From positions 248,001 through 312,000 of the IMG/VR virus record IMGVR_UViG_3300043436_004687: a DNA stretch of 64,000 nucleotides; one strand, given 5' to 3'. Below are positions 14,741 through 63,600 of the stretch, piece by piece. Numbering within the stretch: position 1 is the first letter of the stretch; every line of letters begins with the position of its first letter. The notes beneath the pieces are model-generated. The model had not been told where the DNA came from. It saw only the letters and a list, made by a program, of their open reading frames with translations, and searched no databases. A program made the position numbers and the translations under genes.

Positions 14741-14900
14741 AAATTTCCTTGATTATCTGTGTGAACTACCCACCCCACCAAAGGCGATGAGATGGGCTTC
14801 TTGCACAACGCATAGCCTAATTGCTTACGTTATCGTACAAAGGGTTGTTCCTAACCCCAAAATTCTTTATGTTATATGCAGCGTTTAAATCTCTATCTAT
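14741..14900 (-). ncRNA. Predicted TnpB reRNA/omegaRNA (5' limit approximate); guide predicted from flank ACAGATAATCAAGGAAATTT
   Basis: Established TnpB architecture: the scaffold overlaps the tnpB 3' end and the right-end hairpin, and the guide is the flanking DNA. The 5' boundary cannot be determined by eye. Confidence 0.6.
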
Positions 14901-41559: not shown

Positions 41560-42446
41560 CTAGCCATTTAATTTTATATGTTTATTTATCCATTCTAATC
41601 TAGGTTCAATTTTACCATCTTCCCAATAAAAAGCTTCAAGATAAAACCATTGTTTAAAAGCATCTAAACTAGAAAAAAGTGAAGGTCTATTATTTTTAAT
41701 GTACTTAATTAACAACCCATATTCATCTGCCGTTATTAAGTAATACAACTCTAATTTATATACCCAATGGCATAAACCGTTCTCAAATTTATCTTGATGT
41801 TGTAACATTAATTCTAGTAATTCTTTAATTGTTCTAACTTTCATTTTAATTTAATTTTATATGTTTATTAATCCATTCTAATCTAGGTTTTATATTACCC
41901 ATTTTCCAATAATAAGCGTCTGGAAAAAAATATAGTTCAAAAGCATCTAAACTAGAAAAAATCCAGGGTCTATTATTTTTAATATATTTTAATAAAATAC
42001 CTAATTCATCCATTGTAATTAATTTATTTGCATTCAAACTAAAAGCCCAATCACATAAACCATTATTAAAGTCATCTTGATGTTGTAGCATTAATTCTAG
42101 TAATTCTTTAATTGACTTAATATTCATCTTAATTGATTTTTATATGTTTATTTATCCATTTTAATCTGGGGTTTATTTCACCAAATCCCCAATAATATTC
42201 AGGATAATCGAAAAGGGTTTTAAATGAACTCCAACTGGAGTATACTGGTGGTTTATTTTCACGAATATATTTTTTTAATATTTCATATTCATTACTAGTG
42301 ATAAAACGTCTTATGCGTAAATGATAAATCCAGTTACACAAACCACTTCTAAATAGATTTTGGTGTTCCAACATCACCTCTAACCATTTTAAAAACCCAT
42401 TCTTTGTTAGTTGTTCTTGCATATTTCTATTAATTTTTTTAAACAT
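41560..42446 (-). CDS. Three tandem paralogous ~95-aa genes (41560-41844, 41846-42127, 42129-42446)
   Basis: Shared LE(L/V)ML(Q/E)HQ..F..GLC.W and PRL(E/K)WINKHIK motifs; near-identical DNA blocks. Confidence 0.85.
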
Positions 42447-42802
42447 TCTAACTCAGCTTCTTCATAATTTTTATAAGTAGGTGAGTAAAAATCTATACAA
42501 TTAGTCTTATCAATACCAAAATAATAACCAATTTGATTTATTTGTTTATACTCTTTCTTTATAAAAGAGTCTAAATTATAAACTACTCTAAACCATTTAA
42601 AGGTTTGTTGATATAATGGTGCTAATGTTAAATCATCTATTTTATAACCTAAAGATTTAGAAATGCCTGATATAGACATTCCCCAATGCTGATCAACAGC
42701 TTTTAAATTGTTATCTTTACTATAAAACCCTAAACATTCCTCATCAAAACCTAATTCTTTTAAACTCAACGCTTGTTCGTAAGGTATAAATTCTTTATTC
42801 AT
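42407..42802 (-). CDS. Paralogue-family member
   Basis: MNKEFIPYEQALSLKELGF...APLYQQTFKWFR...YEEAELECLKKLIEI. Confidence 0.8.
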   Translation of the reverse strand: MNKEFIPYEQALSLKELGFDEECLGFYSKDNNLKAVDQHWGMSISGISKSLGYKIDDLTLAPLYQQTFKWFRVVYNLDSFIKKEYKQINQIGYYFGIDKTNCIDFYSPTYKNYEEAELECLKKLIEICKNN

Positions 42803-43120
42803 CTCCACTTCCTTTTTTAATTAAAAAATACCATAACCAAATTATTTTTGGTCTTATTAACTCATAAGCTAACCAAATTAGTAAATACTTTATCCCCATA
42901 ATGTAATTAATGCATGAGATGTGCCAGTTAGAACTAAAATAAACATTGCAATAAACACACGTCTTTCTTTAGTTTGATCATTTAATAAGTCAATTATCAC
43001 ACAAGATAGGATAAACCCTATCAATAAAACATATGTTGTTAAAAAAAATCTATCCATAATTATTATTTTTAGTTATTTATTATTCAACAAAGATATAACT
43101 TTATTTTTTAATATCCTAAT

Positions 43121-47278: not shown

Positions 47279-47446
47279 TTATGTTAAAATTTGCATTCCC
47301 ACCTCAACAAAATGACTTATTGGTGTTCTAACTAATCTATCCTTATCATCGTCCCACCGAATAAATAAATCATTATTTTCAATTTTTTCTATTGTGCCAA
47401 ATAATATATTATCTAAATGCACTCTATCGTTTACTTTATATTCCAT
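47279..47446 (-). CDS. 55-aa SH3-like hypothetical protein, missing from the ORF track
   Basis: MEYKVNDRVHLDNILFGTIEKIENNDLFIRWDDDKDRLVRTPISHFVEVGMQILT; its start overlaps the upstream stop codon. Confidence 0.6.
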   Translation of the reverse strand: MEYKVNDRVHLDNILFGTIEKIENNDLFIRWDDDKDRLVRTPISHFVEVGMQILT

Positions 47447-47940
47447 TACTCTATTAATAATTTGTTATTGTTTAGGAATATGTTAACTTCTTTGAATGTT
47501 TGTGCTACCTTTGTAAATTGTTCAATTTGGTTTTCTGTTAATTCTTGAGTTCTATCGAAAAAACCTGCTCCGTGACCATTTCTAGTTAACCAAAAATCAT
47601 GTCCCATTTGTGATGCTTCTAATGATGTAATGTCGTTAACTTGTGTTAAGAATGATTCACAATCGTTTTTAGCTTGTTTAAGGTTTGAATTTTCAAATAT
47701 GCTATCTACATTGTCAAGGTCTTCATTTGTCCATTGTGCGCATTCTAAATAACCATTAACCATATCATTAAGATATTGTTGATAAAGCAAATAATTTCTA
47801 TTTGTCTCATATTGGTCTTTATCGATTAGTTGACTTAATGATAATCTATTGTTATATAGAAAGGTTTCTTTTATAGAATTTTCTTTATTTTCTAGGAAGT
47901 CTAATACTGCTAATGATACGTTTTCTCTATTGATTTTCAT
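47446..47940 (-). CDS. Conserved phage hypothetical protein (HDFWLTRNGHG family)
   Basis: YLECAQWT...GHDFWLTRNGHGAGFFDR motif. Confidence 0.7.
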   Translation of the reverse strand: MKINRENVSLAVLDFLENKENSIKETFLYNNRLSLSQLIDKDQYETNRNYLLYQQYLNDMVNGYLECAQWTNEDLDNVDSIFENSNLKQAKNDCESFLTQVNDITSLEASQMGHDFWLTRNGHGAGFFDRTQELTENQIEQFTKVAQTFKEVNIFLNNNKLLIE

Positions 47941-48383
47941 TTTGAATTGTGTTATTTGATTAATACACTACAAAGATATGAATTTATATCTTATAAAACA
48001 AACTTATTATGTTAAAGTTTTGAGTTATAATATTCAATAAATTTTTCAAGGGTTTTAAAATAACCTAATACAAACCCTTCGTCTTCGGACTCTTCAAAAC
48101 CATCAAATTTGGGTGCATCTAATTCGGGAGCGCACATTTGATAACGTTCCATAATTTGGGTTAATAAGCTTGTTTCTCTCGAAATTAAAGCGCCTATTTC
48201 CTTACGATTAAATATAATTGATTGGTAGTATTCTCGACCTCTGCCAGTCGAATTTGGTTCACTAAAAGTAATTTGATTTGTGTTTGTGATTCTCATAATG
48301 TTTGTTGATTAATACATAGCAAAGATATAACTTTATATTTAGATATACAAATAAAAAGTGAATTATTTTCAAATATGCGTTAT

Positions 48384-48460
48384 AAAAAAATATAAGGTAG
48401 GTTGGAGTCTACTCTTCCACCTTGTTAGGGTACGCCCTTTGGGAGTTTTGCTCTACCAAC
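48384..48460 (-). ncRNA. Small RNA family, copy A
   Basis: TACCTTTG (48465-72) then GTTGGTAGAGCAAAACTCCCAAAGGGCGTACCCTAACAAGGTGGAAGA-GTAGACTCC-AACCTACCTTATA-T7. Confidence 0.7.
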
Positions 48461-48480
48461 ACTACAAAGGTATGAATAAA

Positions 48481-48596
48481 GATCCATATATGCAAATAAA
48501 AAGTGTTAAATTTTTACAAATAAAAAACCCTATTCACTCTGAAGTTTGGAATAGGGTTTTTAAAAACAAATGTTAGTATTAATCAGATAAAACATT
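48481..48596. repeat. 116-bp perfect direct repeat, copy 1 (copy 2 at 50892-51007)
   Basis: Base-by-base identity from gatccatatatgc to gataaaacatt; includes a terminator hairpin and the -33 region of the sRNA promoter. Confidence 0.9.
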
Positions 48597-50810
48597 TTTC
48601 TTTTTAGGGTTCAATAAACTATCTATAAATTTATTGAATGTATTTCTTTTGTAGGGTTTGTAATTTATTTCGGTATTGAATAAGGCTTTAAATTTATTCA
48701 ATTGGTACTGAATACCCGATTTTTGCAATTTGATAGGATTTTCTTTTTTCAATCTATTTTTGAATGAAATTGAAAATCTTTTTAGGTCGTAATAGCTAGG
48801 AATTATTTGAATGTTTAAAATTCTCAAGCTATATAATTTATAATCGTTTCTAAATGATTTCATATATTAATAATTGTATGAATTAATAAATTTTACACAA
48901 GCGTTATAAGTCGCATTTATTTTTGATTCATTAAAAGAAAATGAACCACTTTGTATAAATAATTCTCTTTCGTCATTTGGTTCAATTACACAACTATAAT
49001 TTTCTATGTTAACACTATATCCTAAACTTTCAATCTTTTCAACTACTTTCATTAACCAATTCCAGTCAGTATGATATTTAGAATATTTTGCAATACCTTG
49101 AATTACTTTCTCAATATCGTTTTCTCTTATTGAGAAAAAAGGCATATCTGAAAAACTATAAACTCCATCTAATTCACATTTAGGTTTTAAACCAACAAAT
49201 TCGTTTATAATTCTATTATTTTCTTCAATAGTTGGAACAATGTTTAAACTTTCCTTTGCTCTTTCAAGGGTGTTAAAATCTCCGCTTTCAAAGTTTTCCC
49301 CATTTTCAAAGATTCGTGTAAAGAATTTTTTACCTTCTTTAACTACTTGCATATTGTTTTTTTCAAAAACTACTTCTTGTGTGTTCATAATGTTTTTTTG
49401 TTATCTTGATTAATACACTACAAAGATATAACTTTATTTTTTAATATGCAAATTTATTTATTAAAAAATTGTATAATACAACCATTTTGATTAATATTGT
49501 AATTTTGGTTTAATATGGTTGTGTTATTGCTTTTGATTAGTATTGAATTCGTACTAGGTGTATTGTTAGTTATTTTTACTTCAAAATAACCTCTTTTTAA
49601 TAAGGAAACATTTATATTCCTTTGAGTTGTTTTCAATAGTGTATCGGGTGTAATTCCGTTATAATCAATTAAGATTAAACTGCTATTGGTTGCACCTTGC
49701 CAATTGATTTGGTTTTGTGTAAATTCGGCTTTCGGTGGTTCGTTTTTAATGTTAACATTTTCGTTATCAGCTGTACAACTTGCCAATAGAAAGATTAACG
49801 AAAATGCAACTAATTTCATTATCGACAAAGTAAAGAATAATTTTTTCATAATATGTATTTTTAATGGTTAATACCTCAACAAAGATATAAATTAATATTT
49901 TAATATGCAAACTATTTTAGATAATTTTTTTCATAAATATCAAATTGTCCTACAATTGATAATAAGCCGTTTTCATCATTTAAAGTATCTTTGGTAATGA
50001 TTTTACCATCCTTTGATTGATATTGAGTCAAAACGCCTTTAAATTGCTTTATATAATCTATTTCGTTTTCAAATAACCATAAATCATATTCGGGGTTTGT
50101 TGGGTGTTGTAATTCGGTTTTAAATCTATATCCGTGTTGAGTATATTTAACCTCAACAATTAGAGTAGATTTTCCGTTGTATTGTGGATAATGACAATTT
50201 TTAATAACTACCCTTTCATTTTTATAATCGTATGGTGTCATATTATTTTGTTATTGGGGTGTAAATGTTGCTATTCATTGCAATTCTGTGAGTTTCTTGT
50301 GTTGCGTGGTCAAAAAATTGTAAGTAACCATTATGTTTATTACTTAACAATTGACAATTTTTATAGGTTGTTGGTGGAAAACCATAACTAGGGTTTATAT
50401 CTTGTGTTACATCAGCAAAATAGGGCATGAATTTATTGTTAACATCAATTGCATCCTTTGGTGGGTTGCTTGAATATTCCCACAATCTTGATTGAAATGC
50501 TAATTTGCCATTAGTATCAAAAAATTTACCATCCTTTTCAAATATGTTTGGCATTGGTTCTTTTGTATATAATACTTGACCAATTAAATCGAATTTTACT
50601 ATTTTGAATACCATAATTATATTTGAATTAAGGTTAAAACTATTAATGATAAGAATGTAAGCAAAGCAATGTTTACTTTAGTTTGAATTTCTTTTGATGC
50701 TTTTTTAGTTGTTGCCATCGTTATAATAATGTTTGTTGATTAATACACTACAAAGATATAAAATAATATTTACTTATCCTAATAAAATGTGTTAAAATTT
50801 TCAACCTTAT

Positions 50811-50871
50811 AAAAAAAATATAAGGTTGGTTGGAGTCTACGTCTCAACTTTTCTCGTTTGCTTTGTATTAC
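50811..50871 (-). ncRNA. Small RNA family, copy B
   Basis: TACCTTTA (50876-83) then GTAATACAAAGCAAACGAGAAAAGTTGAGAC-GTAGACTCC-AACCAACCTTATA-T8. Confidence 0.65.
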
Positions 50872-51011
50872 TATGTAAAGGTACAACAAAGGATCCATAT
50901 ATGCAAATAAAAAGTGTTAAATTTTTACAAATAAAAAACCCTATTCACTCTGAAGTTTGGAATAGGGTTTTTAAAAACAAATGTTAGTATTAATCAGATA
51001 AAACATTCGAT

Positions 51012-51368
51012 TTTAAAAATAGGGAATAGTTTTCTCACCCTATTATGATTGAAACTTTAATATCATCCGACAATGGCGCACATATTGGCAAATCGGAATT
51101 AAATCAATCTTTGACAAAACCACCTATCTAGTTTTTATCTTCTCTTTGAGCCGTGTGAAATCAGTTAATATAAAACGGCATTTGATAGGAATTTAAAATA
51201 AACCATTGTGTTAAGTTGCGTACACTACTACTTGCAATATTAATAAGATTTTAAACACTTGTAATCCTAGTCTTCTTTATGGTTTATTATTTTTTAAAAT
51301 GAAAGGTAAGTCTTGATGTCTTACGTTAATTCGTTTTATGATGGCTTGCTTACAACCCTCTCATTTCT
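51012..51368 (-). ncRNA. Candidate ~355-nt structured non-coding RNA of unrecognised class
   Basis: Own TACCTTTG promoter (51373-80) and terminator (51015-44); I found no sizeable ORF on the transcribed strand; four nested-helix domains identified by eye. Confidence 0.7.
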
Positions 51369-52610
51369 TTTACAAAGGTAATTCTTTTATTTTAAACTAC
51401 CAAATATTTTTTGTTAAATTTTCAATAAAGTTTTACATTCTAAACCAAATGAATTGTTTATAAAAACCTCTTTCATTTGATATTTTCTACCATTCTTTAA
51501 TTGGAATTTATCCAATGCGTCTTGACTTTTAAATTCTTTTATGAATGTCATATTAAATAAATTTTCGTATGTTGTCAGCCTCTTTTTTATATTCAGAAGT
51601 TTTGATTTTATATTCTGAACATACGTCTTCTAAAATTGTCAAAGCCAACAAAGAATTATGTTTTAAGAATTCGCTATCTGAACCAATAGCACCGCTATTT
51701 AAAGCACGTTCTAATTTCTTGAATGCGTTTTCTTCAATATCTTTTAACATTTGTTTTACTCTTACTTTGGAGTATCTTAATGCAGTTTTTTTAGTATTGT
51801 CCATAATGTATTTTGATTAATATTTCTTTAGCAAAGATATGAATTAATATTTAAACTACCAAATAAAAAATGTTAAAGTTTTCTATAATCAAAATTAATA
51901 AGGGAATTGCCTCTTGCTCTCTTTTGAATCATTGGTAAAAATCCAGCACTAAAATAAGGATATTGCCTTTCTAATTCTTTGAATTTTTTTGTACGTCTAT
52001 CTAACTTTTCAATTACAATATGTACCTTTAATTCAAAATAATCAAATATGTTAACATTCAAATCAGCAATTTCCTGGCTTTCAAACATTGTACTATTGCA
52101 TTGTCTATTGGTAAGATTTTCTTTTGCGTTAAGCATAATAAATGTATCTCTACCTATCTGAACTAAACTAAATACTTTTTTCATTTTGTTTTTATTTATT
52201 TGATTAATACACTACAAAGATATGAATTTATATTTTAATATCCTAACAAATTATGATAAACTTTTAGCGCAAAAGCTTTCTTTTACATCTTCAAAGTTTC
52301 TTTCAATTAATTCTATAGTTACATTTAAAATATAACGTTCATCCGTTTCTTTGTTTCCACATCTTAACCAAGTTGAAACATTTTCAGCATCAATCGCAAC
52401 TATAAATAAATCCCAATTAATACCACTACTAAATGTAATTTGTAATCTATATTTATGTGCTTTTTTCATTTTGTTTTTTATTATCTTGATTAATACACTA
52501 CAAAGATATGAATTAATATCTTATAAAACAAATAAATTATCATTTATTTTTATTTGAAATTTTAACACTTTTTATTTGGTGGTTTAAAATATATTTTGTA
52601 CCTTTGTTAT

Positions 52611-52690
52611 GTTGAAAGATACAAACAAAGAAAGTAATGAAAATTATTGATACGTAGACTCCGTCACACCCATATATGAAATATTTTTTT
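52611..52690 (+). ncRNA. Small RNA family, copy C (divergent 3' end)
   Basis: TACCTTTG (52599-606); AGTAAT-GAAA-ATTATT hairpin; GTAGACTCC at 52654; terminator 52699-730. Confidence 0.6.
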
Positions 52691-54193
52691 AAAAGCATAA
52701 AAAATCCGTATTATAATAATACGGATTTTTAAATATAATTTAGTATGTAAAATTTCTCGTTCTACCTAAAAGAGTATAACGGCTTTTATCGCCTAAATAA
52801 GTCAATTGTACATTAACAACCATTCTTACAATATCCTCAAAACTTCCACTAGTAAAAGAAACATCTTTCAAACTACCAATTGAAAATTTAACCTTGATAG
52901 TTAACACTTCGCAATATTCGGTTTTAGTTGCTTTGATTGTATATTTTACATTCAATTCTTTTAAATAGTCTTTAACGTTTCCATTGTACTGAAGTGTTTT
53001 ACTTCCCATATTCCACCAATGGATTAATAAATTTGACTTTAAAATTCTTTCTATTTCTCTTTTGTTGTATGGTTCCATAATATTTTTATGTTATTTGATT
53101 AATACACTACAAAGATATAAAATAATATTTACATACGCAAATAAAAATGCAAAAAAAAATCCATTATTTTCATAATGGATTTTTAGACGTTTTAAGCAAC
53201 GTTATTAGATTTAATGACTACTAACTCTAAATGGTTGGAAATCTTTAACCTCAAAGCTTTTAATTGCATCCACATCCAATTTAACTTCATTGAATAAATT
53301 CAATGTTGGATTGTTTGCACCCTCAACCATTTTTTTAACGCTTGCATCATACAAAGGAATCAAGTCTTCAACCTTAGCACCGCAATAGATAACATTTGCT
53401 TTCATATCTAGCTTAGACATTGCAATATATGTAACATACAAATATTTAATTTCATCTTGACTAAACAAATCGAAATTTTCAGCTAAAAAATCACTTGCTC
53501 GGTTTAATTCTTTTGCACCATTCAAAGAAAATGCAGTAGTTTTAATATGATTGTTTTCATCATAGAATCTAACTAAAAATTGAGAATAGGTAGATTTTTT
53601 AGGTTTGTTTTTTAATCCAGTTTTTGGATTGATAGTTTGCGTTACGTGACGATAACCCTTCTTTTTATCGAATTCAATTGAATCAAACAAAGTAGTTCTA
53701 GCTGTGTAACCATAAGGATAATTTTCTACTTCTACTACTTCTGATGTTGGGATAAATTTTCTCATTTTGTTTTATGTTATTTGATTAATACACTACAAAG
53801 ATATAAATTAATATTTACTTATGCAAATTTATTTTGAATTAATTTTGATATTTGAATGAATAAAATAATTGTTATTATCTTTCAATCTCAATTTTCTCAA
53901 TTTCATAATACAAATATTTGGAATATCTGAAATGTGGATAATTTTATAATGATTGTTATTAATTCGTTTTAATAATAAAGTAGGGTTTGGATTAAATATT
54001 TCATTAATTGAATTGAAAGAACCATTTGGAATACCTACAAAAATATGTGAATTTTTAAATTTTCTCATTTGAATTATGTTCTTGATTAATACACTACAAA
54101 GATATAAAATAAAATGTTACAATCCTAATAAAAAAATGAATTATTTTTTATTTAAAATTTGTGTATATGGATTTTTATTTGTACCTTTGTAGT

Positions 54194-54272
54194 GTTGGTA
54201 GTGAAAACTGAAACGGGTTACTAATCAAAAATTAGTCAGAGGGTGGACTCCGACCTACCTTATATTTTTTTT
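54194..54272 (+). ncRNA. Small RNA family, copy D
   Basis: TACCTTTG (54182-89); AGT-GAAA-ACT and ACTAAT-CAAAA-ATTAGT hairpins; GTGGACTCC-GACCTACCTTATA-T8; terminator 54290-322. Confidence 0.7.
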
Positions 54273-55611
54273 AAAAAAAACTGAAGACAAAAAAACCATA
54301 TAAATTTCTTATATGGTTTTTTAATTTATTATTTTCGATCTCTATTTTATTAAGTATATATTATTTATAGTTACCTATTCGGGTGGTGCTTTATTTCTAT
54401 CCATCTTTAAATTATTAATCAGCGTTCAAAACTTCTAAATTGTAACCAATGTTTTCTAATTCGTTAAACAAATCTTTGTATTGTTCTTTGGTTGCATCCT
54501 TGCAATTGTTTTTGATAAAATCAGAATGACAAATTGAGTGTTGCCCTAAATTAGCATAACAATCAAATCCATTATCTTTATTTGGCATTTCTGGGAATAC
54601 TGCCAAAACCTCGCTAAATGGTTGTTCATCCAATTCACTTGGTGTATATGTAGCAATGTAAAATTGTACTTTGGTAATTTCTGTATCTTTTTTCATTTTG
54701 TTTTTATTTATTTGATTAATACACTACAAAGATATGAATTTATATTTTAATATCCTAATAAAATATCAATTATTTTCTAAAACCATTTAAAAGTTCATCT
54801 AGTAAAATATAACCTACTCCGATAAATGGTAAACCGCTATTTGGTTCGTAGTTATAATTGTATTGTAGTCTAATTTGCAATTCATTATTTTTATCTAATA
54901 AGAAATTTTGAAATCTACTAAATCCAGTAATTGATTTTTTAAGAATTTCGTTTACTTCTTTATCAGCTTTTTTTTCTTCATCTGTAAAATCACTTCTTTT
55001 TATTCCTTCATAACCTTTATTTTGAAGTGTTAATGATGGAAAATTTTTATAAATTTCTAATAAAGTTGAATGTTGCTCCTTAGTTAATAAATTGATTTTC
55101 ATAATGATTTTATTTATCTTGATTAATACACTACAAAGATATAAATTAATATTTAGATATACAAATTTATTTTACTTTATTTTCACTATATAATTTTTTC
55201 GCTTTATATTGATAACTACCAAAAGAAACAATATGTTTTTCTACTAAATTATGAATAGTTGCATTATTACTTTCACAAGCTTTTGACAACCTACCTATAA
55301 AAACCTTATAAGTTAAAGCACCATTATTAAAATCCTCAATTGATTTTCTTGCTTTCCAATAGTTTTGATTTTCAGTAGTTCCGTGATTTTCATTTGGAAA
55401 AAATCTACTAGTTACTTCCGTAGCCACCTTATTGAAAAAATCTTCTGTTGTATGTATCATAATATTTTATTTATCTTGATTAATATGATACAAAGATATA
55501 AAATAATATTTTAATATTCTAATAAAATATGTTAAAATTTAATCATAAAATATTTTAAAAATAATTGTATTTTTATTTGGTAGTTTAAAATAATTGTCGT
55601 ACCTTTGTAGT

Positions 55612-55691
55612 GTTGGTGGTGATAACCGAAACAGGCTCCTACAATTCTTTTGCGGGCGGAGGGTGGACTCCGACCTACCTTATATTTTTTT
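55612..55691 (+). ncRNA. Small RNA family, copy E
   Basis: TACCTTTG (55600-07); GGT-GATA-ACC hairpin; GTGGACTCC-GACCTACCTTATA-T7; terminator 55709-739. Confidence 0.7.
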
Positions 55692-57516
55692 AAAAAAAAA
55701 GATATAAAAAAATTCCATATATTAACTATATGGAATTTTCAAAACCAAACCAAAACCTATTTAACCAATCTTAAAAAATCATCCAATTTACTACCACATC
55801 TTAAAGTAATTTTTTCGTAAACATGACCATTGTCCCCAATCTCAAAAAAGTATTCAACGTCTTCAGTTCTCAAGCTACCCTTTTTACCACCTTTAACGCT
55901 ATTGTGAACCTCTAAACCAGTGTTTTGTATTCTAGTTAAAAACGCATTTGTTTTTTCATCAATTTCGTTTTGTTCAATGTTTTTTAAAACCTCAACCGCT
56001 TGCAAATAACTTAACCAATCATCCATTTTTTTAATGGTTGGTTTACCTACTTTGTTAGGCATAACTAAATCGTGCTTTATATCAGTTTTTGAACCATTAA
56101 GTAAAGAAAACTCGAAACTAGTTTCGTTGTAACGCTTAAATGGTCTTAACAAAATACCTTTAAACTCAACATATACATCAATAATATCGTGGTAATTTTT
56201 TATTTGTTCAATATCATTTTTAACATCTAAATAAGGAATAATTTTTACAATCCCTTCAAAGTGTTTTAAACTATCTAATTTTTCTTTTAAATATTTTTCA
56301 CTATATTCAGTTAAAATGTAACCTTCTTTTTTTGCTTGCTCTAATGTAATTTGATTTTTCATAATTAAATAATGTTTGTTGATTAATACATAGCAAAGAT
56401 ATAAATTAATATTTACATATACAAATAAAATATGTTAAAATTTCAAATTAATCTATACCCCAACCACATTCGTCATACTCATTACTATTTTTGCAAATAT
56501 AACAAGCAATTACATTAATAATTTCATTTAAAAATAACATAGCATTTTCTTCTAATTCTGTCAAATTTCTAATATCAGTTATATGCTCAACTTCAATTTG
56601 ATAATCTAAACATTGTAATTGTTTAAATAAATTAATTGGACTCAATTTAAAAATAGGAGTTTTTTCAAAAACTTGTAAATTTTCCTTTGCAATTTCAGCA
56701 TCTAAAACACCCTCGTAATGATGCTTATATTGAAGTGTAACTGCCAATACATTAATTTTTCTTAACTCATCAACAATCAAATCAATTTCATTTTGCCAAT
56801 CATTTTTTTTGTTGACAATGTTTTCAAATTTTTCTTTCAATTCATAAGGCAAATAAAAATTAGATTTTGAAATTAATACTTTCAATGATTCAGCAATTGA
56901 ATTAAAATGTTTCGGACTGCAAATGTAACTAGACATAATATTTTATTTTTATTGATTAATACCTTACAAAGATATAAAATAATATCTTAATAAACAAACT
57001 TTAAATGTTAAATTTTTGAAATTTCACTTGGACTTAATCTAACATCTTTTTTACAATCAGTAGTACCATATACAAACGAACCTCTTTTCATTGGATATGG
57101 TGGAAATGATTTAATAACAAATTCAGTACCCATTGCAATTTTTTCTTTATAGTCAAAACTCTCTACTAAAGTTTTACATCTATCTCCAACTTTAAAACCT
57201 TTATAACTTAACATAATTTAATCGTTTAAATGTTCAAATACATCGTTGGTACTCATTCCCATAGTACGAGGAAAATTAATATATTGTAAGTCATTATTTT
57301 CATCAATATAACTAAATATATCGTTAACCTCATTACTTCTCACAAATTGAATATTACTTGCTTTCATTTTTTTATCTTTATTGATTAATACACTACAAAG
57401 ATATAAATAAAATTCCATATAAACAAATAAATTAATATCTTTTTTACAATAAAAATAATTTGAAATTTTAACACTTTTTATTTGTATATTCAAAAAACAA
57501 TTTGTACCTTTGTAGT

Positions 57517-57591
57517 GTTGGTAGAGAATATCCCAAAAGAAAGTAATGAAAATTATTGATACGTAGACTCCAACCTACCTTATATTTTTTT
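57517..57591 (+). ncRNA. Small RNA family, copy F
   Basis: TACCTTTG (57505-12); 5' part like copy A, middle identical to copy C; GTAGACTCC-AACCTACCTTATA-T7; terminator 57606-634. Confidence 0.7.
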
Positions 57592-58068
57592 ATAAAGATA
57601 TAAAAAAATATTCCATACATTATATGGAATATTTAAAAACATATTAATTAATATATTAATTCTTTTATAAATTTAAAATCCTTATCAAATTTAACTAACT
57701 TTTCTTTATTGGTTAAACTATTGATAATACCACAATCTAAAGTATAAGAGTTTTTATTTTTGTAAACTCTTGCCTTATGTAAAAATATCTTTGTTTTAGA
57801 TAATAAACTATCTAAAGCATAATATCTATTTTTTTCTAAATAGATATGAACATAACCCAATTTTTGCAATCCCTCTTTACTATTATTAGCTTGTACCAAA
57901 ATAGTGTTTTCTAAATTTGTGAAATACATAATATTTTACTTTATCGATTAATACACTACAAAGATATAAAATAATATCTTATAAAACAAATAAAAATCAA
58001 TAAAAAATAAATTAAAAATAATTGCATTTTTATTTGCATATCTAAAATTTTATTCGTACCTTTGTTAT

Positions 58069-58130
58069 ATACAAAGCAAGGGAGCAAACCTGAGAAGTAG
58101 ACTCCACCCTACAATAAACTCAACTTATTT
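58069..58130 (+). ncRNA. Small RNA family, copy G
   Basis: TACCTTTG (58057-64); ATACAAAGCAAGGGAGCAAACCTGAGAA-GTAGACTCC; colinear with copy B; no clear U-tract. Confidence 0.6.
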
Positions 58131-58306
58131 ATAACAAGTCTAAATTATAAAAATTTAACAAAATAAATTTGCATATCTAAAAAACAATTCATACCTTTGC
58201 ATTTGACTGAATAGTGTACACTCACCCAAAAATGTAGTGTACACCCAACTCATACAACCATATCACAAAAGTACCCTCTAATGCGGTACAACACAACTAT
58301 GAAGTA

Positions 58307-58618
58307 ATGCCAAACATAAAAAAACTAAAAGAAGCATACAACAAAGCAAGCCAATCAAAAATTGGTGATAAAACAATATGCCCTTCTTGTAACAACTCAT
58401 TCGAGAAAAAAACATATAACCAAATATTCTGTAAAGCAAAACCAAATACAACTTGTAAAGACTATTACTGGAATAACATAACACCCAATAAAAGAAATAA
58501 CAAAACTAGAATATCACCAGCTTCCAAAAGATTCATGGCTAATAATATATTATATAATATATTTAACCCCGATGACTATGAACACCCCTTCAGCTCCGAT
58601 GCTCTAGGACAAGACTAA
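58307..58618 (+). CDS. Cys-rich (zinc-finger-like) hypothetical protein
   Basis: CPSC...FC...C pattern; preceded by a TACCTTTG promoter near 58192 and a ~105-nt leader. Confidence 0.65.
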   Translation: MPNIKKLKEAYNKASQSKIGDKTICPSCNNSFEKKTYNQIFCKAKPNTTCKDYYWNNITPNKRNNKTRISPASKRFMANNILYNIFNPDDYEHPFSSDALGQD

Positions 58619-58772
58619 AATTATATTTCATAGCAATCATGTAAGGTTAAAACTGACTATGCGTATATGAAACATAATATATAAAATATCCCCAAGTACA
58701 CATTTGTGTTTATAAAATTTAATGTATTGTGTACTTTATAATTTTTCACTCTATTTATAATAAAAGATTATT

Positions 58773-59282
58773 ATGGGTAGAAATATGGAAGTTAGAAAAA
58801 AATATTTAGAAGCTAATAAAGAAAAAATAAAAGAACAAAAGAAAATTCGTTATGAAGCTAATAAAGAAAAAATAAAAGAATATCAAAAAAATTATCGTAT
58901 AAATAATAAAGAAAAAATAAATAATTATTATAAACGAAAAAGAAGTGAGGATGAATTGTATAAATTAAAAGGAAATACAAGAAATTTAGTCAAAAATTCA
59001 CTTAAAGGTTTTTTTAAAAACATATATAGAACAGAAGAAATCTTAGGTTGTACACTAGAAGATTTTAAATTACACTTAGAATCAAAATTCGAATCATGGA
59101 TGAATTGGGGTAATTATGGTATCTGTAATGGTGAATTAAATTATGGATGGGATATTGACCATGTTATACCAATATCGAGTGCTAAAACATTAGATGACGT
59201 ATATCGTTTAAATCATTATACTAACCTACAACCATTATGTAGTTATACTAATAGATATATAAAAAGGGATAGCTACACATAA
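58773..59282 (+). CDS. HNH-type endonuclease, paralogue of 2849-3553
   Basis: EANKEKIKE repeats, then ILGCTLEDFKLHLESKFESWMNW...WDIDHVIPISSAKT...NLQPLCSYTNR. Confidence 0.8.
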   Translation: MGRNMEVRKKYLEANKEKIKEQKKIRYEANKEKIKEYQKNYRINNKEKINNYYKRKRSEDELYKLKGNTRNLVKNSLKGFFKNIYRTEEILGCTLEDFKLHLESKFESWMNWGNYGICNGELNYGWDIDHVIPISSAKTLDDVYRLNHYTNLQPLCSYTNRYIKRDSYT

Positions 59283-59987
59283 CAAAAAATTAATCCTACC
59301 CTCATACTTGAGAATAGCATTATAATACCCTTATATACCATCGATCCAAATCAATGGACACAAAAGTGTACCTGTAAAAAATAACTAATATCCAAATTTA
59401 AAATGTTAAAATTTTCATAAAATATCCGAAGCAATCAGATTTTTAGATAGATTAAGTTAGATTTAAGATAGTTTTAGATAGATTAGAATATAATCATATT
59501 ATCTTTTATTGTATGTTTATATGGTATATTCTATATCATTTCACTTTGTAATTCAAAGTACTTTATAGTTCAAATTTCTTTGTAGAATTTAGTGGAGTTC
59601 TTATATACGTTACTTTTGCGTATATTTTGTATTATGTTGCTTCTATATTCTATTAGTCTTATGCTTATATTTTATGGTATCTTATCCATAATTTACCACA
59701 TATTACCACTTGATTTTAAAGCGTGAACATGAAATATTTATTAGAATGTATAAAAATATGGGTTAATTATGGGGTTTTACATCAATTTTTGTATAAAATT
59801 GATTATACCAAGAATGGGTATTGCATGAATAAATGTTGTATAGGATATTATACAATTTCTATAATTACATTCTTCACTATCCTTTCCATCGAATATCCAG
59901 TTTACCATTTCTTTTAGAAAGAAGATTGATATAAGGGGTATATAGAAATACCATTTGCTATCTAGGAATGCTTTTTTCATATATGAT

Positions 59988-60669
59988 TTATTTTAGGTTT
60001 TGTTTTATGTATTGGTTGAATTCTATTTCATCTAGGTTACTGGATTTTCTACCTATATGAGAATTAAAATCTAGGAGTAGGTTTATTGCTTCTTTTCTAT
60101 TCCAATTATCTTTTGGGTTTGGAATAGGGAATGATGTAGTTTTTATATTGATAGTATTATCTTTTGGATTTACTTTCAATTGGGTTGGTTCATCTTCATA
60201 GACTTTGAAAAGAACATCTGTTTTTATTTCATATTCTACATATACCTTTGTGATTATGTTCAAAGTAATGTTCAAGGAATTCTTTTGATGGTTTTGGTAA
60301 AGATTTGTAACCGCTTGTATCACATGATTTGCATTGATTGAATCCATCTTTATCGTGTGAGCCTTGTCCATTGCAAGAAATACAAATTGATTTTAGGGAT
60401 TCATCATTTGATGCTATAATCTTTTTATTTAATCTATCTTTTATTGGTATATGATTACCGCTTGCAAGATATTTCATATTTTCTATAAAGCAATCACCTC
60501 TTTGTATTTCATCATTTGTTATGATGGATATGCTTTGTAGTATGAGAGAAGCGTTCCAATCTTCTTTGGTTGCATTTAAATCCTTTACAAACTTTAATTG
60601 GTTTTTATTTGAGTCCAATATAATTTGCTCTTTTATTTCGTGAGCATGATTCCAGTCTTTTAATATCAT
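59988..60669 (-). pseudogene. Gene apparently split by a frameshift near 60250 (listed as the two overlapping ORFs 60229-60717 and 59988-60371)
   Basis: The upstream frame carries IITNDEIQRG...KKIIASNDESL...PKPSKEFLEHY; a protein-like continuation NIITKVYVEYE...LKVNPKDNTINIK...WNRKEA lies in the other frame. Confidence 0.55.
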
Positions 60670-60673
60670 AGTT

Positions 60674-63600
60674 TTAAATTTTTTGACAATAAACGCATTT
60701 TGCGGTTTCTCTACCATACATAGTTTTCATTGAGCAAGTTCCATAATGAGTTCTTAAATCTGAAAACTTAATTTCTGTGTAACCTAATGTAACTAAATGG
60801 TTTTCTAAATCCACTTCATTATTAGCTACCAACCTTAAATCTTCACCAAAATCATTTTCTAAATGTAATACTAATAAATTCATAATTTAATCAATTTAAG
60901 TTTTCCTATAATTCCAGTTGCAATAAATGTAGATGTCTCACCTTTTAAAATTATTGAGCCAACACCATTTGTAAATTTATCGACCAATTCAATATCTTCA
61001 ATTATTCCTTTATAACCTTTGTAAGCATCTGCACCATCACGTCTTGGGCAAGTTAATATTTCAACCTCATCACCCTTTTTAAAATTCGATAAGTGTAATT
61101 TTGATAAAAAATTAAACATAATAGTTTTTTTTATTGATTAATAACATTACAAAGATATAAAATAATATTTACATACGCAAATAAAAAACATATTTTTTTA
61201 AAATGTTTCAAGCCAACGATAAGAAGCTTGTTTAAGAATGTTTATTTGTACCATCAATAGATTAGAAGATACATCCATTTGAGTTAATTTTGCAGTTTCT
61301 CTACATAATTTGCGAACCATTGAATTATCTGGGAAAATACCAGTTTTTTCAGCTTCTTTAATTTCTCGAACACTTAACTTGATTTCATCATCAGATAAAT
61401 CAGCATATAATTTACTTATTTCATTCATTATCTTATTTTTTTGTTGAATTGTACTTCCATTTAATTTTATTAATAAATGATTCATTTTCACATAATTCAT
61501 CAAGATTTGAAAAAAGTTTATTTTGATTTGAATTAATGTAAAAACTTATACCCGAAACCCCTTTATTTTTCGTATAATGTCTTCCATCGCTAAAATAAAC
61601 AACTTCGCCTAAAATTTTATATTCAAATGTTATATCGGGGAAATTTCTGTTTTCTTCTCCTTTTATATCTACTCTAATAAGTCTAGGGTTAGAATATTCA
61701 GTAGCAACTATTCCCATTTTATTGAGACATTCATTTAACTTTATTAAATCATCTGAAATCAATTTTTTTAAGTTATCATTAACAAACCTATTATTTATTT
61801 CAATCTCTTTAATTGCTTTATCAATATCAAATGCTTCTATATCGAACGCTTCTTTAGATAACAATTTAAATGGTTTTTGTTCTGCATTGTTTAAATTGAT
61901 AAACTCATTTTCAAGATTAGCTAAAATTTGAATTTGTGTTGGTGTTAAATTTATGTTTATCATAATCTTATTTTTATTGATTAATAATTTTCTTCTACAA
62001 AGATATAAAATAATATATTATAAACCTAATTATTTTTGATTTAATTTTTCAATTAATTTCTCAATTGAAATTGGTTCTTTATAATACCTTAAATTTTTCA
62101 TTGATTTAAGACGCTCTGTTACCCTTTCCCTAACAATTTGAATATCTTGTTGGGTTGGTGTATAATCATTCATTAAATGACTTGGAATGTCGTTGAAAGC
62201 ATCTGAATAGTCAGTTGGATTGAAACCTCGTTTGATACATTCTTGTGTTAATGCTTCGTAGTGTTTTTTTAAAAAACCGCATTTATTCATCAAAGAAAGT
62301 TCATGCCCCTTATTGAGTGTGAATTTATCAATTGGTTTACTTTTGTATTTCCCCGATTTTATTTTGTTTGGGATTCTTAATACCTCAATTCTTTCTCTGT
62401 TAAGATGTTTATCACATAATTCATGTGAAAACCCTACTGAAACTCTAGTCATATCTTAAAGTGATATGAATTTAACCGCATCGGGTTGTAAAGAAAATTC
62501 TTTTAAAATATAAGTTTCTATCTCAAGTTTTGTGAAATTTGGAACATCATCACCCTTATAAAGATAAGTATTTATAACGTTATTTGGTTCATTGTTTTCT
62601 ATTCTATATACAAATAAACTTCTAGTGTTTTCTTCACCCAATATTGGTTTTAAAACGTAATATAATTTTAACATATCTTTATGTTTTAATGATTAATAAT
62701 TTTCTTCTACAAAGATATAAAATAATATTTTAATATGCAAATAAAAAAGACATTTTTTTTAATATTTTATTTAGGAGTCATTTCAACCTTATTTCTATCC
62801 CCCAAATTAAATTTGGTGACTGGAAAGAGCGTCTTTTAAATAAAATATTAGTCTAATAATTTTTTCACTAATTCATAAGATAATGAAAAACTTTTAGGTG
62901 TTACATCAAATCGTCCATTTAATTTTAAAATATGAATAGTATCATAAGTCATATCACATACTGCAATTTCTTCAGTATGTTTACCCTCTTTGAAATCCAC
63001 TTGTAATTGCCTTACTTCATATTCATTCAAAATATATTCACCAACTTTAAATTTAGGAACTGGAATTCTCGTGATATTCATATCTTTATATTTTTTTAAA
63101 TGTTTCACATTCTTTTGCTATAACAAATGCTTTAAAATCGGAACCCCATCCACTTTTAGGTTGGGTTTTCAAAGCATTTATAAATTCTGTATTATGAAAT
63201 CCCAAAGGGATACAATTACCTTTATATACTGCATTTAAGTTATCACTATATTTACCCTCTGAATTACCACAATCACATTTTTTTATGATGTTGGGTGATA
63301 ATGAGAAAACAGATAAACAATCATTACAAAATAATAGTTTCATTAGAAATCGTAAGTTACTACTTGAACATCACTTAATGTTATTTCAAGATTATTAACA
63401 AAGTAAATTTTTTTACCGCTTGATTTAAAAAACGCTTCTTTAAACTCATTTAAAGCTATTAATTTAATCTCCAAAGTTTCATTATCAGTTTGATGTCTAA
63501 ACCATTCCATAAAAGGAGTTGCATACATTTTTATCATATTAATATGTTTTAAACGTTATACAATAATCAATAGCTTCTTGTTCATCGTCAGTAAACAATA

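What the first reader, a model, noticed from the sequence alone, without database searches (positions are those of the whole stretch)
47956..62717. Early region built from near-identical promoter cassettes, one gene each (modular shuffling array)
Seen: 21 TATCTTTG promoters, 11 of them in an exact 23-mer (TATCTTTGTAGTGTATTAATCAA), so conservation extends well past the -7 box into the 5' UTR. Most drive a single short unknown gene, with bidirectional hairpin terminators between units. Established: TAnnTTTG/TTTG is the Bacteroidota sigma70 consensus, and T4-type phages shuffle genes through repeated early promoter-stem-loop (PeSL) cassettes. Inference: an integron-like, recombination-driven library of host-takeover or anti-defence genes in which RNA genes are also cargo.
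Basis: partly seen in the sequence, partly recalled or inferred. Interest (0 to 1): 0.65.

Follow-up and report, generated by a model that had tools for sequence, protein, structure and literature searches.

The report
Early-promoter cassette array in jumbo phage
A 340-kb lake-water phage of Bacteroidota puts almost every small early gene, and several small RNA genes, behind its own copy of one near-identical host-type promoter plus leader; this is the Bacteroidota counterpart of the promoter/stem-loop cassettes known from T4-type phages, not an integron.

Summary
There are 21 minus-strand TATCTTTG boxes in window 47971-62717. Eleven sit in the exact 23-mer, which occurs nowhere else in the 339.6-kb circular phage genome. 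Each box is a Bacteroidota sigma-A promoter: -33 TTTG/TTAG, a 20-nt spacer, then the -7 box. A 16-32-nt A-rich leader and 1-5 small ORFan genes follow. RNA-only units with TACCTTTG promoters lie between them.

The 23-mer is under selection. A relative 22% diverged in coding DNA keeps it exactly, and many large Bacteroidota-phage contigs carry their own version of the extended motif.

The cassettes also look like recombination substrates:
- Cassette pairs share exact tracts far longer than independent columns predict; one 72-nt tract joins two unrelated genes.
- One strain variant has a breakpoint at a -33 element.
- The relative has different neighbours and a different gene order, with homology ending at cassette edges.

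Best reading: an array of autonomous immediate-early expression cassettes in a hyperplastic region, analogous to T4-type PeSLs. "Integron-like" fails: there is no tyrosine integrase and every cassette has its own promoter. Anti-defence cargo is untested. A conserved, unannotated phage small-RNA family turned up as a by-product.

The parts
47956..57403 (-). Block holding the 11 exact copies of the 23-mer (-7 box, predicted +1 G, first 10 nt of the leader). Copies at 47956, 49406, 50736, 52200, 52486, 53095, 53781, 54082, 54712, 55119 and 57381, each 23 nt long. Near-copies at 48305, 55476, 56379, 56952 and 57944.
47971..62717 (-). 21 composite promoters (-33 TTTG/TTAG, 20-nt spacer, -7 TATCTTTG). 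Upper coordinates of the -7 boxes: 47978, 48327, 49428, 49887, 50758, 51839, 52222, 52508, 53117, 53803, 54104, 54734, 55141, 55498, 56401, 56974, 57403, 57966, 61157, 62005, 62717. Median spacing 591 nt.
47279..62674 (-). 34 called small genes (45-201 aa) behind these promoters, nearly all without a family match. Examples: 53211-53765 (184 aa, widespread family of unknown fold), 55757-56362 (201 aa), 47446-47940 (164 aa, phrog_1915 domain from residue 55).
62030..62452 (-). DenV-like pyrimidine-dimer DNA glycosylase, the one cargo gene with a clear family.
   Evidence: PF03013, E 1.6e-08
52175..52254 (-). Promoter cassette that shares a 72-nt exact tract (-33 element to third codon) with the cassette at 54687-54766. 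The genes behind the two are unrelated.
54194..54272 (+). Small RNA gene of the GACUCC family. It has its own TTTG-N20-TACCTTTG promoter (-7 box 54182-54189) and a 3' hairpin followed by a U-run.
55612..55690 (+). Small RNA gene of the same family (-7 box 55600-55607).
57517..57592 (+). Small RNA gene of the same family (-7 box 57505-57512).
48385..48460 (-). Small RNA gene of the same family (-7 box 48465-48472). It lies inside the 131-nt repeat 48466-48596, which is 96% identical to 50877-51007.
50812..50871 (-). Divergent family member behind a degenerate -7 box (TACCTTTA). Its terminator hairpin is 50802-50828.
52611..52690 (+). Further RNA-only unit (-7 box 52599-52606). Its middle part matches the RNA at 57517, but its 3' end differs.
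58069..58125 (+). Variant family member containing GUAGACUCCACCCUAC (-7 box 58057-58064).
50940..51372 (-). Non-coding unit of about 430 nt behind a TACCTTTG promoter (-7 box 51373-51380). It ends at the GC hairpin 50940-50967. It has no ORF and no Rfam match.
52700..52730 (.). Bidirectional intrinsic terminator (A-run, 14-bp stem, T-run). Others of the kind: 53155-53184, 54290-54322, 55709-55739, about 57608-57633, 50802-50828.
58192..59282 (+). Oppositely oriented module: TACCTTTG promoter (58192-58199), a 103-aa ORF (58307-58618) and a 169-aa ORF with a weak HNH match (58773-59282). The 169-aa ORF is 57% identical to window 2849-3553. Probably a free-standing homing-endonuclease insertion.
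47780..48330 (-). Segment replaced in strain variant L105. Gene 48012-48296, promoter 47978 and the first 54 codons of the 164-aa gene are missing there. A different promoter variant and a 21-codon N-terminus take their place.

Best explanation
The interval is part of the immediate-early, hyperplastic arc of a circular-mapping, ~339.5-kb jumbo myophage. The phage is distantly T4-like, comes from lake water and infects a member of Bacteroidota, probably Flavobacteriia.

The arc is built from autonomous expression cassettes. Each has:
- an upstream AT-rich element;
- -33 TTTG/TTAG, a 20-nt spacer and -7 TATCTTTG, read by unmodified host RNA polymerase with sigma-A;
- a predicted start at the G of TAGT|G, so that mRNAs begin GUAUUAAUCAA;
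- a 16-32-nt A-rich, Shine-Dalgarno-less leader with A at -3;
- one to a few small ORFan genes, in some units closed by a bidirectional terminator.

RNA-only cassettes use TACCTTTG promoters.

The identity of the 23-mer is maintained mainly by selection on promoter and leader function. Secondarily, the repeated cassettes provide 30-70-nt homologies at which units are duplicated, deleted, replaced and reordered. This parallels PeSL cassettes in T4-type phages.

Shown here: the anatomy, the enrichment, conservation of the motif across relatives, the lack of conservation of the cargo, linkage among cassette positions, and a few breakpoints at cassettes. Inferred: early timing, recognition by host sigma-A, the position of the start site, and recombination as a mechanism rather than an outcome.
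For: Anatomy and enrichment.

Fit to the host promoter: -33 TTTG / -7 TANNTTTG, with the start site 4-5 nt after the box in F. johnsoniae (PMC6847099). The same 21-mer serves once each as promoter plus leader of ordinary genes in Bacteroidota MAGs and metagenome contigs.

Phage identity and circular map.

Composite promoters are confined to the small-gene arc and absent from the structural arc at 120-260 kb.

Cargo turnover: ORFs from 250-339 kb have almost no homologues in five relatives, including a complete 299-kb one. Family searches find almost nothing.

Selection: relative R has 72-81% amino-acid and 75-79% nucleotide identity in two array genes. It carries the exact 23-mer, and one promoter is identical over 41 nt. 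Related arrays with lineage-specific sequence after the -7 box occur in G005 and in many IMG/VR contigs, with up to 38 promoters in 14.6 kb.

Exchange:
- Column-shuffle test: 11 pairs share at least 30 nt beyond the box, against 0.04 expected. The longest tract is 72 nt and joins unrelated genes.
- The 131-nt terminator-plus-promoter repeat is 96% identical between its two copies.
- A duplicated gene, about 330-350 bp at 99.4% identity, has its copy boundary in the leader.
- Strain variant L105 has its left breakpoint directly after a -33 TTTG.
- In R, neighbours differ and the 173-aa-like gene lies on the opposite side of the 184-aa gene. Homology starts at the stop codon of the upstream gene in both comparisons.
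Against: - No transcript data exist: no RNA runs hold the region. Timing, start sites and the sigma factor used are therefore all inferred.
- The phage encodes two or three sigma-70-family proteins, any of which might read these promoters.
- Intergenic DNA here consists almost entirely of cassette. Any gene-preserving indel would therefore end in one, and the breakpoint coincidences are weak discriminators.
- Only three or four events were seen. One of them, the 196-bp deletion 49512-49707, is intragenic and away from any repeat. The right breakpoint of L105 lies inside a coding region.
- A PHI-like test for recombination was not significant: 0.849 against 0.871, p about 0.06.
- Near-identical assemblies from other samples are collinear.
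- Joints in Logan contigs are short-sided and ambiguous.
- Stem-loops accompany only a minority of cassettes in this genome.
Confidence: 0.65

Rival explanations
1. Regulatory constraint only. The 23-mer and its relatives are conserved because they form an optimal promoter, initial transcribed sequence and leader, or the target of a phage regulator. Cassettes play no special part in genome rearrangement. Gene turnover comes from ordinary illegitimate recombination, filtered by selection for intact genes.
For: The 23-mer is conserved across 22% coding divergence. A related motif is found across the clade. The PHI-like test is not significant. Population assemblies are mostly collinear. One deletion lies away from any repeat.
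Against: Exact tracts of 30-72 nt run through positions that otherwise vary and join unrelated genes. Left and right cassette halves are shared in mosaic fashion. The L105 breakpoint lies at a -33 element. Orthologous genes in G000 and R carry different cassette subtypes.
Confidence: 0.25
2. The promoters are read by a phage-encoded sigma factor and so belong to a middle class. The extended sequence after the -7 box would be that factor's specificity determinant.
For: Two clear sigma-70-family genes, and one weak one, are in the genome. The extended consensus is lineage-specific.
Against: The -33 element, the -7 element and their spacing match the host consensus exactly. The same 21-mer drives ordinary bacterial genes in Bacteroidota MAGs. 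Arrays of this kind precede ORFans, as early genes do in T4-type phages.
Confidence: 0.12
3. Integron-like site-specific cassette system. A recombinase captures and excises gene cassettes at the repeats.
For: Only the superficial picture of many short single-gene units flanked by a repeat.
Against: There is no tyrosine integrase. The single serine recombinase lies at 87.6 kb beside a TnpB gene. Each unit has its own promoter. The repeat is not an imperfect palindrome of the attC kind. Positions conserved in the repeat coincide with promoter elements.
Confidence: 0.02
4. The conserved +1..+11 leader is the target of a post-transcriptional regulator, either a phage protein (in the manner of T4 RegA or RegB) or one of the interspersed small RNAs. 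The regulator would shut off or time the whole early class together.
For: Conservation extends into transcribed sequence. The ATTAATCA element keeps its sequence while shifting by up to 7 nt relative to the -7 box. Small RNA genes are embedded in the same block.
Against: No convincing complementarity between the small RNAs and the leader was seen on inspection. No RegA- or RegB-like protein was identified, though no dedicated search was run. An effect on promoter escape or translation would explain the same conservation.
Confidence: 0.15

Closest known systems
PeSL (promoter-early stem-loop) cassettes of T4-type phages (Arbiol et al. 2010, PMC2839356; Comeau et al. 2014, PMC4122927)
   Same: - About 40-50 copies per genome of a strong promoter of the host's primary-sigma type.
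- The copies cluster in hyperplastic regions, immediately upstream of small ORFans.
- Conservation extends beyond the canonical boxes, and terminators are associated with the cassettes.
- Differences between relatives map to the cassettes.
- The host phage is a (distantly) T4-like myovirus.
   Different: - The promoter is the Bacteroidota -33/-7 type rather than sigma-70 -35/-10.
- There is no Shine-Dalgarno sequence. Instead there is a conserved initial transcribed sequence and an A-rich leader.
- In this genome a stem-loop belongs to only about a third of units. The relative G005 has GC stem-loops abutting the -33 element.
- RNA-only cassettes are interspersed.
- Mini-circles and promoter/terminator activity are not shown.
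T4 early promoters, with their extended consensus (own knowledge; the general description is in PMC2839356)
   Same: Many near-identical, very strong host-type promoters serve short early transcripts of non-essential genes. Their consensus is longer than the host's own.
   Different: The host phylum and consensus differ. Here conservation continues 11 nt into the transcript.
Integron gene-cassette arrays
   Same: An ordered series of short, mostly single-gene units of unrelated function separated by a repeat.
   Different: There is no IntI, no attC or attI, and no common Pc promoter. Each unit has its own promoter, and the repeat is a promoter. The membership tests fail.
Bacteroidota sigma-A promoters and Kozak-like leaders (Baez et al. 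2019, PMC6847099)
   Same: -33 TTTG, -7 TAHHTTTG, leaders of about 30 nt without a Shine-Dalgarno sequence, A at -3.
   Different: Host promoters show little conservation outside the -7 box. The phage copies are near-identical from about -45 to +16.

Membership tests
PeSL cassettes (T4-type phages) | Strong promoter matching the host's primary-sigma consensus, acting as an early promoter | tested here: met
   41 copies of TT[TA]G-N20-TATCTTTG match the published Bacteroidota consensus. Activity and timing were not measured.
PeSL cassettes (T4-type phages) | Stem-loop (terminator/attenuator) forming part of the cassette | tested here: inconclusive
   Clear bidirectional hairpins lie beside about 6-8 of 21 units. 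A 7-bp AT stem overlaps the -7 box in 4 cassettes. In relative G005, GC stem-loops abut the -33 element in many cassettes.
PeSL cassettes (T4-type phages) | Concentration in hyperplastic regions, directly upstream of ORFans | tested here: met
   Searches give the distribution. One search shows almost no homologues in five relatives. Searches find almost no families.
PeSL cassettes (T4-type phages) | Indels and replacements between close relatives have endpoints in the cassettes | tested here: inconclusive
   One endpoint of the L105 replacement, both G000/R homology edges and one duplication edge lie in cassettes. The sample is small, one deletion lies elsewhere, and intergenic DNA is nearly all cassette.
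PeSL cassettes (T4-type phages) | Circular DNAs formed by exchange between neighbouring cassettes | not testable with these tools
   Only Logan contigs were available. They break at every cassette, and their joints are short-sided.
PeSL cassettes (T4-type phages) | The host genome is a T4-type myovirus | tested here: inconclusive
   The tail sheath matches Phage_sheath domains and is 27-38% identical to gp18 of T4-like phages over its C-terminal part. Other T4 core genes were not examined.
Integron | IntI tyrosine recombinase next to the array | tested here: not met
   No PF00589 match anywhere in the genome, while the controls were positive.
Integron | Promoterless cassettes with attC sites, expressed from one Pc promoter | tested here: not met
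   Every unit has its own full promoter. The conserved positions of the repeat are promoter elements.
Bacteroidota sigma-A promoter | -33 TTTG and -7 TAnnTTTG (TAHHTTTG) at the proper spacing, with the start site 4-5 nt downstream | tested here: met
   Sequence and spacing are met. The start site itself could not be tested because no RNA runs hold the region.
Any Rfam family (for the small RNAs) | Covariance-model match at or near the gathering score | tested here: not met
   No match at gathering score. With E up to 5 there are only chance-level hits, none on the small RNAs. ARAGORN finds no tRNA.

The most novel reading that the evidence does not exclude
The cassettes would be an active, clade-wide exchange system. 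Short homologous exchanges between the conserved promoter/leader modules, possibly through excised circles as in RB49 and phi1, would move single ORFans and small-RNA genes within and between co-infecting jumbo phages of Flavobacteriia. The interspersed GACUCC small RNAs would be a new functional class of phage RNA, shared with unrelated phages such as Tenacibaculum phage Larrie. They might act in host takeover or counter-defence.
Probability: 0.3. Interest if true: 0.65.

Novelty: new variant of a known kind. Interest (0 to 1): 0.45.

Why it matters
- It extends the PeSL/hyperplastic-region model of T4-type genome plasticity to phages of a phylum with a different promoter grammar and no Shine-Dalgarno use.
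- It gives a ready-made consensus (-45 to +16) for strong expression cassettes in Flavobacteriia.
- It offers a simple sequence signature for finding early regions and ORFan libraries in uncultured Bacteroidota jumbo phages.
- It exposes a conserved, unannotated small-RNA family that travels with these arrays.

If exchange at the cassettes is confirmed, it would explain the contrast seen here: complete cargo turnover between relatives beside a stable regulatory scaffold.

Tried and rejected
- **Searches for the window or the exact repeat:** megablast of the region against cultured phages found nothing. The exact 23-mer is absent from IMG/VR and from five relatives at up to 3 mismatches.
- **The 21-mer elsewhere:** in metagenome and genome collections it occurs only as single copies in unrelated Bacteroidota contigs. 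These are ordinary promoters, two or three of them in front of HicA-like genes. They are not relatives and not a host clue.
- **Synteny with five sheath-based relatives:** impossible, because no cargo is shared.
- **PHI-like recombination test on the cassette alignment:** not significant. Site pairs are 87% incompatible, which is saturation in an A/T alphabet.
- **Reads (read laying):** only Logan contigs were available, and they break at each cassette.
  - The joints have 20-48-nt sides and cannot separate recombinants from other cassettes or other phages.
  - Zero-depth bins hint at presence/absence polymorphism: gene 52740-53078 in run X3 at about 8x, and gene 55167-55460 in low-coverage X4. 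I do not count them as shown.
- **Paralogy among array genes:** only the 173-aa gene has distant paralogues, so the array did not arise by gene-family expansion.
- **Identity of the small RNAs:**
  - RNAalifold supports only the 3' hairpin, because the variable hairpin is misaligned.
  - Single-sequence folds are no more stable than shuffles.
  - I considered tRNA, anticodon-arm mimic, HDV-like or hammerhead ribozyme, CRISPR-repeat mimic and TnpB guide RNA by inspection only, and found no support for any.
- **Function of the 184-aa cargo protein:** the model is confident (pLDDT 96), but Foldseek found no PDB match.
- **Phage RNA polymerase:** no Pfam match to the beta subunit. The T7-type search is uninformative because its controls were silent.


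Full report
**Where the window lies.** The window is bases 248001-312000 of a single 339,635-bp contig with 26% G+C. The first and last 127 bases of the contig are identical, so the map is circular, about 339.5 kb. A second assembly of 339,459 bp is permuted and identical over window 43211-63765. Lake-water metagenomes hold the sequence.

The genome encodes a tail sheath with Phage_sheath domains, whose best matches among cultured phages are gp18 of T4-like phages at 27-38% identity. It also encodes a large protein with an SprB repeat. No close cultured relative exists. It is a jumbo myophage, distantly T4-like, with a Bacteroidota host. The promoter grammar points that way. A small RNA shared with a Tenacibaculum phage suggests Flavobacteriia.

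**The observation.** TATCTTTG occurs 34 times in the window against 5.65 expected. Twenty-one copies lie on the minus strand between 47971 and 62717. The 23-mer occurs 11 times exactly and 5 times with 1-3 mismatches, all on the minus strand between 47956 and 57966. It occurs nowhere else in the genome.

Every copy has TTTG or TTAG exactly 20 nt upstream. Genome-wide, 41 minus-strand TT[TA]G-N20-TATCTTTG sites lie between 291 and 335 kb. The composite motif is nearly absent from the structural arc at 120-260 kb.

Each of the 41 is followed by an ORF of at least 30 codons. That ORF starts 16-32 nt (median 26) after the predicted start site, and A stands at -3 in 35 of 41. By the gene calls, 13 of the 21 promoters in the interval precede one gene, and 34 genes share the 21 promoters.

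Clear bidirectional terminators separate only a minority of units. A further upstream element, TTWAACR near -45, is present in 13 of 50 cassettes against 2% background.

**What the promoter is.** The published consensus for the primary sigma factor of Bacteroidota is -33 TTTG and -7 TANNTTTG, refined to TAHHTTTG. In Flavobacterium johnsoniae the start site lies 4-5 nt after the box, leaders average 33 nt, there is no Shine-Dalgarno sequence, and A at -3 favours initiation (PMC6847099). The phage cassettes fit on every count.

By that rule, transcription starts at the G of TAGT|G. The mRNAs then begin GUAUUAAUCAA, and the conserved 15 nt after the box are four discriminator-like bases plus the first eleven transcribed bases.

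The same 21-mer occurs once each in unrelated Bacteroidota contigs and MAGs. In all but one of these (L101, where it lies in a GC-rich, non-promoter context) it precedes an ordinary small gene at the same distance. A host polymerase can therefore be expected to read it. Early timing and host recognition remain inferences, because no RNA run holds the region and the phage has two or three sigma-family genes of its own.

**RNA-only units.** A second promoter class, TTTG-N20-TACCTTTG, occurs on both strands of the same block and drives units without ORFs.

Five units share a 5' GUUGGUAG (in most of them) and a 3' end GACUCC(A/G)ACCUACCUUAUA followed by a U-run. They lie at 54194-54272 (+), 55612-55690 (+), 57517-57592 (+), 48385-48460 (-) and 50812-50871 (-). 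Variants lie at 52611-52690 (+) and 58069-58125 (+). A non-coding unit of about 430 nt lies at 50940-51372 (-).

ARAGORN and Rfam find nothing.

**Cargo.** Pfam and PHROGs leave almost all proteins unexplained. The exceptions are:
- a DenV-like glycosylase (62030-62452);
- a phrog_1915 domain in the 164-aa protein;
- a plus-strand module with a weak HNH match (58773-59282), whose paralogue lies at window 2849-3553.

The genes are not paralogues of one another. The 184-aa protein belongs to a family of more than 248 members. Its model is confident (pLDDT 96), but no solved structure resembles it by Foldseek. Nothing tested here shows a host-takeover or anti-defence function.

**Selection on the 23-mer.** Two array proteins have close relatives on short Logan contigs of another phage, R (25% G+C). 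These are 81% and 72% identical in protein and 75-79% in DNA. R carries the exact 23-mer in two of its four visible promoters. The promoter downstream of the 184-aa gene is identical to its G000 counterpart over 41 nt, while the adjoining coding sequence is 78% identical.

The complete 299-kb relative G005 shares no cargo with this region. Yet it has about 50 such promoters in two divergent arms, with a conserved spacer, CA-rich leaders, GC stem-loops abutting the -33 element, and TACCTTTG RNA units.

The IMG/VR contigs found through the small-RNA motif carry their own arrays, with up to 38 promoters in 14.6 kb. Each lineage has its own sequence after the box, along the lines TA(G/T)TGT...AAT(C/T)AA. 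The architecture and the general motif are thus old and functional, while the exact wording is lineage-specific.

**Evidence for exchange at the cassettes.**
1. I aligned the 41 cassettes on the -7 box. Eleven pairs share exact tracts of at least 30 nt beyond the box, against 0.04 expected when columns are shuffled independently. Left and right halves are shared with different partners. The null ignores descent, so this shows common descent or exchange of cassettes, not recombination as such.
2. Cassettes 52222 and 54734 are identical for 72 nt, from the -33 element to the third codon. Their flanks and proteins are unrelated.
3. A 131-nt terminator-plus-RNA-promoter module is repeated at 96% identity. 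A gene segment of about 330-350 bp is repeated 48.5 kb away at 99.4%, and one edge of the repeat lies in the leader.
4. Strain contig L105 replaces gene 48012-48296, promoter 47978 and 54 codons of the next gene with another promoter variant and 21 codons.
   - The left breakpoint lies directly after the -33 TTTG.
   - The right breakpoint lies at the start of the phrog_1915 domain.
   - The window-type haplotype occurs in the same sample.
5. In R the 184-aa gene follows an 86-aa gene that G000 lacks and a homologue of the 173-aa gene. In G000 that homologue lies 3.8 kb on the other side. The 201-aa homologue in R follows a gene with a Mg_chelatase_C domain that G000 lacks. In both comparisons homology begins at the stop codon of the upstream gene. 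The orthologues also carry different cassette subtypes.

**Limits of that evidence.**
- The events are few.
- One deletion (49512-49707) is intragenic and lies at no repeat.
- Other population contigs are collinear.
- A PHI-like test is not significant.
- Logan contigs break at each cassette, so their joints are uninformative.
- Non-coding DNA in this region is almost entirely cassette, so endpoints of gene-preserving events must fall in cassettes whatever the mechanism.

I therefore treat recombination at cassettes as likely but not shown.

**Comparison with known systems.** PeSLs of T4-type phages are about 50 cassettes per genome. Each holds a strong sigma-70 early promoter with a stem-loop terminator. 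They cluster in hyperplastic regions upstream of ORFans, and recombination between them yields indels, replacements and mini-circles (PMC2839356; PMC4122927).

The present array has the same place, the same role and apparently the same evolutionary behaviour. It differs in four ways:
- the promoter grammar;
- a conserved transcribed leader in place of a Shine-Dalgarno sequence;
- the minor part played by stem-loops in this genome;
- the interspersed RNA cassettes.

The integron comparison fails. There is no tyrosine integrase, and the only serine recombinase sits beside a TnpB gene at 87.6 kb. Every unit has its own promoter. A search of the paper library found no description of such arrays in Bacteroidota phages, though the library is incomplete.

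**Verdict.** I rate it a new variant of a known kind, of moderate interest. The by-product most worth following is the small-RNA family. It occurs in 14 IMG/VR contigs, in G005, in a 635-kb uncultured phage and, unannotated, in cultured Tenacibaculum phage Larrie. In six contigs it lies next to a DUF932 gene.

Noticed in passing
window 48385-48460(-), 50812-50871(-), 54194-54272(+), 55612-55690(+), 57517-57592(+), 58069-58125(+); L138-L155; G005 about 186.4-186.5 kb; L158:1440-1530: A conserved small-RNA family with its own TAYCTTTG promoter. Its layout is GGG, a variable hairpin, RAGAG, the hairpin GUAG/ACUCCRAC/CUAC, UUAUA and a U-run. It occurs in 18 stretches of 14 IMG/VR contigs (up to 299 kb), in relative G005, in a 635-kb uncultured phage and, unannotated, in cultured Tenacibaculum phage Larrie. 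It is not in Rfam. In six contigs it lies next to a DUF932 gene. Function unknown.
   Followed up: partly
window 50940-51372 (-): A unit of about 430 nt behind a TACCTTTG promoter, ending at a GC hairpin. It has no ORF and no Rfam match, and it is richer in G+C than its surroundings. Possibly a larger structured RNA.
   Followed up: no
window 53211-53765 (-): The 184-aa cargo protein belongs to a family of more than 248 members (45-82% identity) found in aquatic metagenomes and phage-like contigs. It matches no Pfam or PHROG family. The AlphaFold model is very confident (pLDDT 96: a beta-sheet followed by three long helices), yet Foldseek finds no PDB match.
   Followed up: partly
window 14817-15935 (-); genome 13042, 61752, 86447, 92410, 96100, 104166 and 315336: Eight paralogues of about 370-410 aa. 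At least one carries OrfB_IS605 / Cas12f1-like TNB domains (TnpB). The copy at 86.4 kb lies next to a serine resolvase, an IS607-like arrangement. That is an unusually high transposon load for a phage.
   Followed up: partly
window 58773-59282 (+) and 2849-3553 (+); genome 321868-322692 (+): Free-standing homing-endonuclease-like genes sit in opposite orientation to the array. Two are paralogues 57% identical to each other with a weak HNH match. One is a GIY-YIG / I-TevI-like gene beside the DUF932 gene.
   Followed up: partly
window 42732-43078 and genome 339306-339635 / 1-140: A direct repeat of about 330-350 bp (99.4% identical over 330 bp) holding a 55-aa gene lies 48.5 kb apart and brackets the promoter-dense arc. 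The second assembly's contig ends inside it. One copy has a TATCTTTG promoter and the other has none.
   Followed up: partly
window 21556-46057 and genome 51943, 338948: Several families of small paralogous proteins lie just upstream of the array. One has six members of about 125-140 aa, another has five members, and there is a tandem triplet of 93-105 aa at window 41560-42446. So part of the small-gene arc did grow by duplication.
   Followed up: no
L100, L102, L137 (Bacteroidota metagenome and MAG contigs): The exact 23-mer precedes HicA-like toxin genes in three different Bacteroidota contigs. This suggests that the promoter-plus-leader is conserved with hicA in bacteria.
   Followed up: no
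genome 22956-23165, 115669-115878, 219216-219383: Two clear sigma-70-family genes and one weak one are in the phage genome. They presumably serve the middle and late classes, whose promoters were not sought.
   Followed up: no
window 52801-53000 and 55201-55400 (run X3, run X4): Logan contigs of run X3 (about 8x) have depth 0.06 over gene 52740-53078. Depth in run X2 dips there to 28, against 36-43 beside it. Low-coverage run X4 has depth 0 over gene 55167-55460. Single cassettes may be present or absent among strains.
   Followed up: partly
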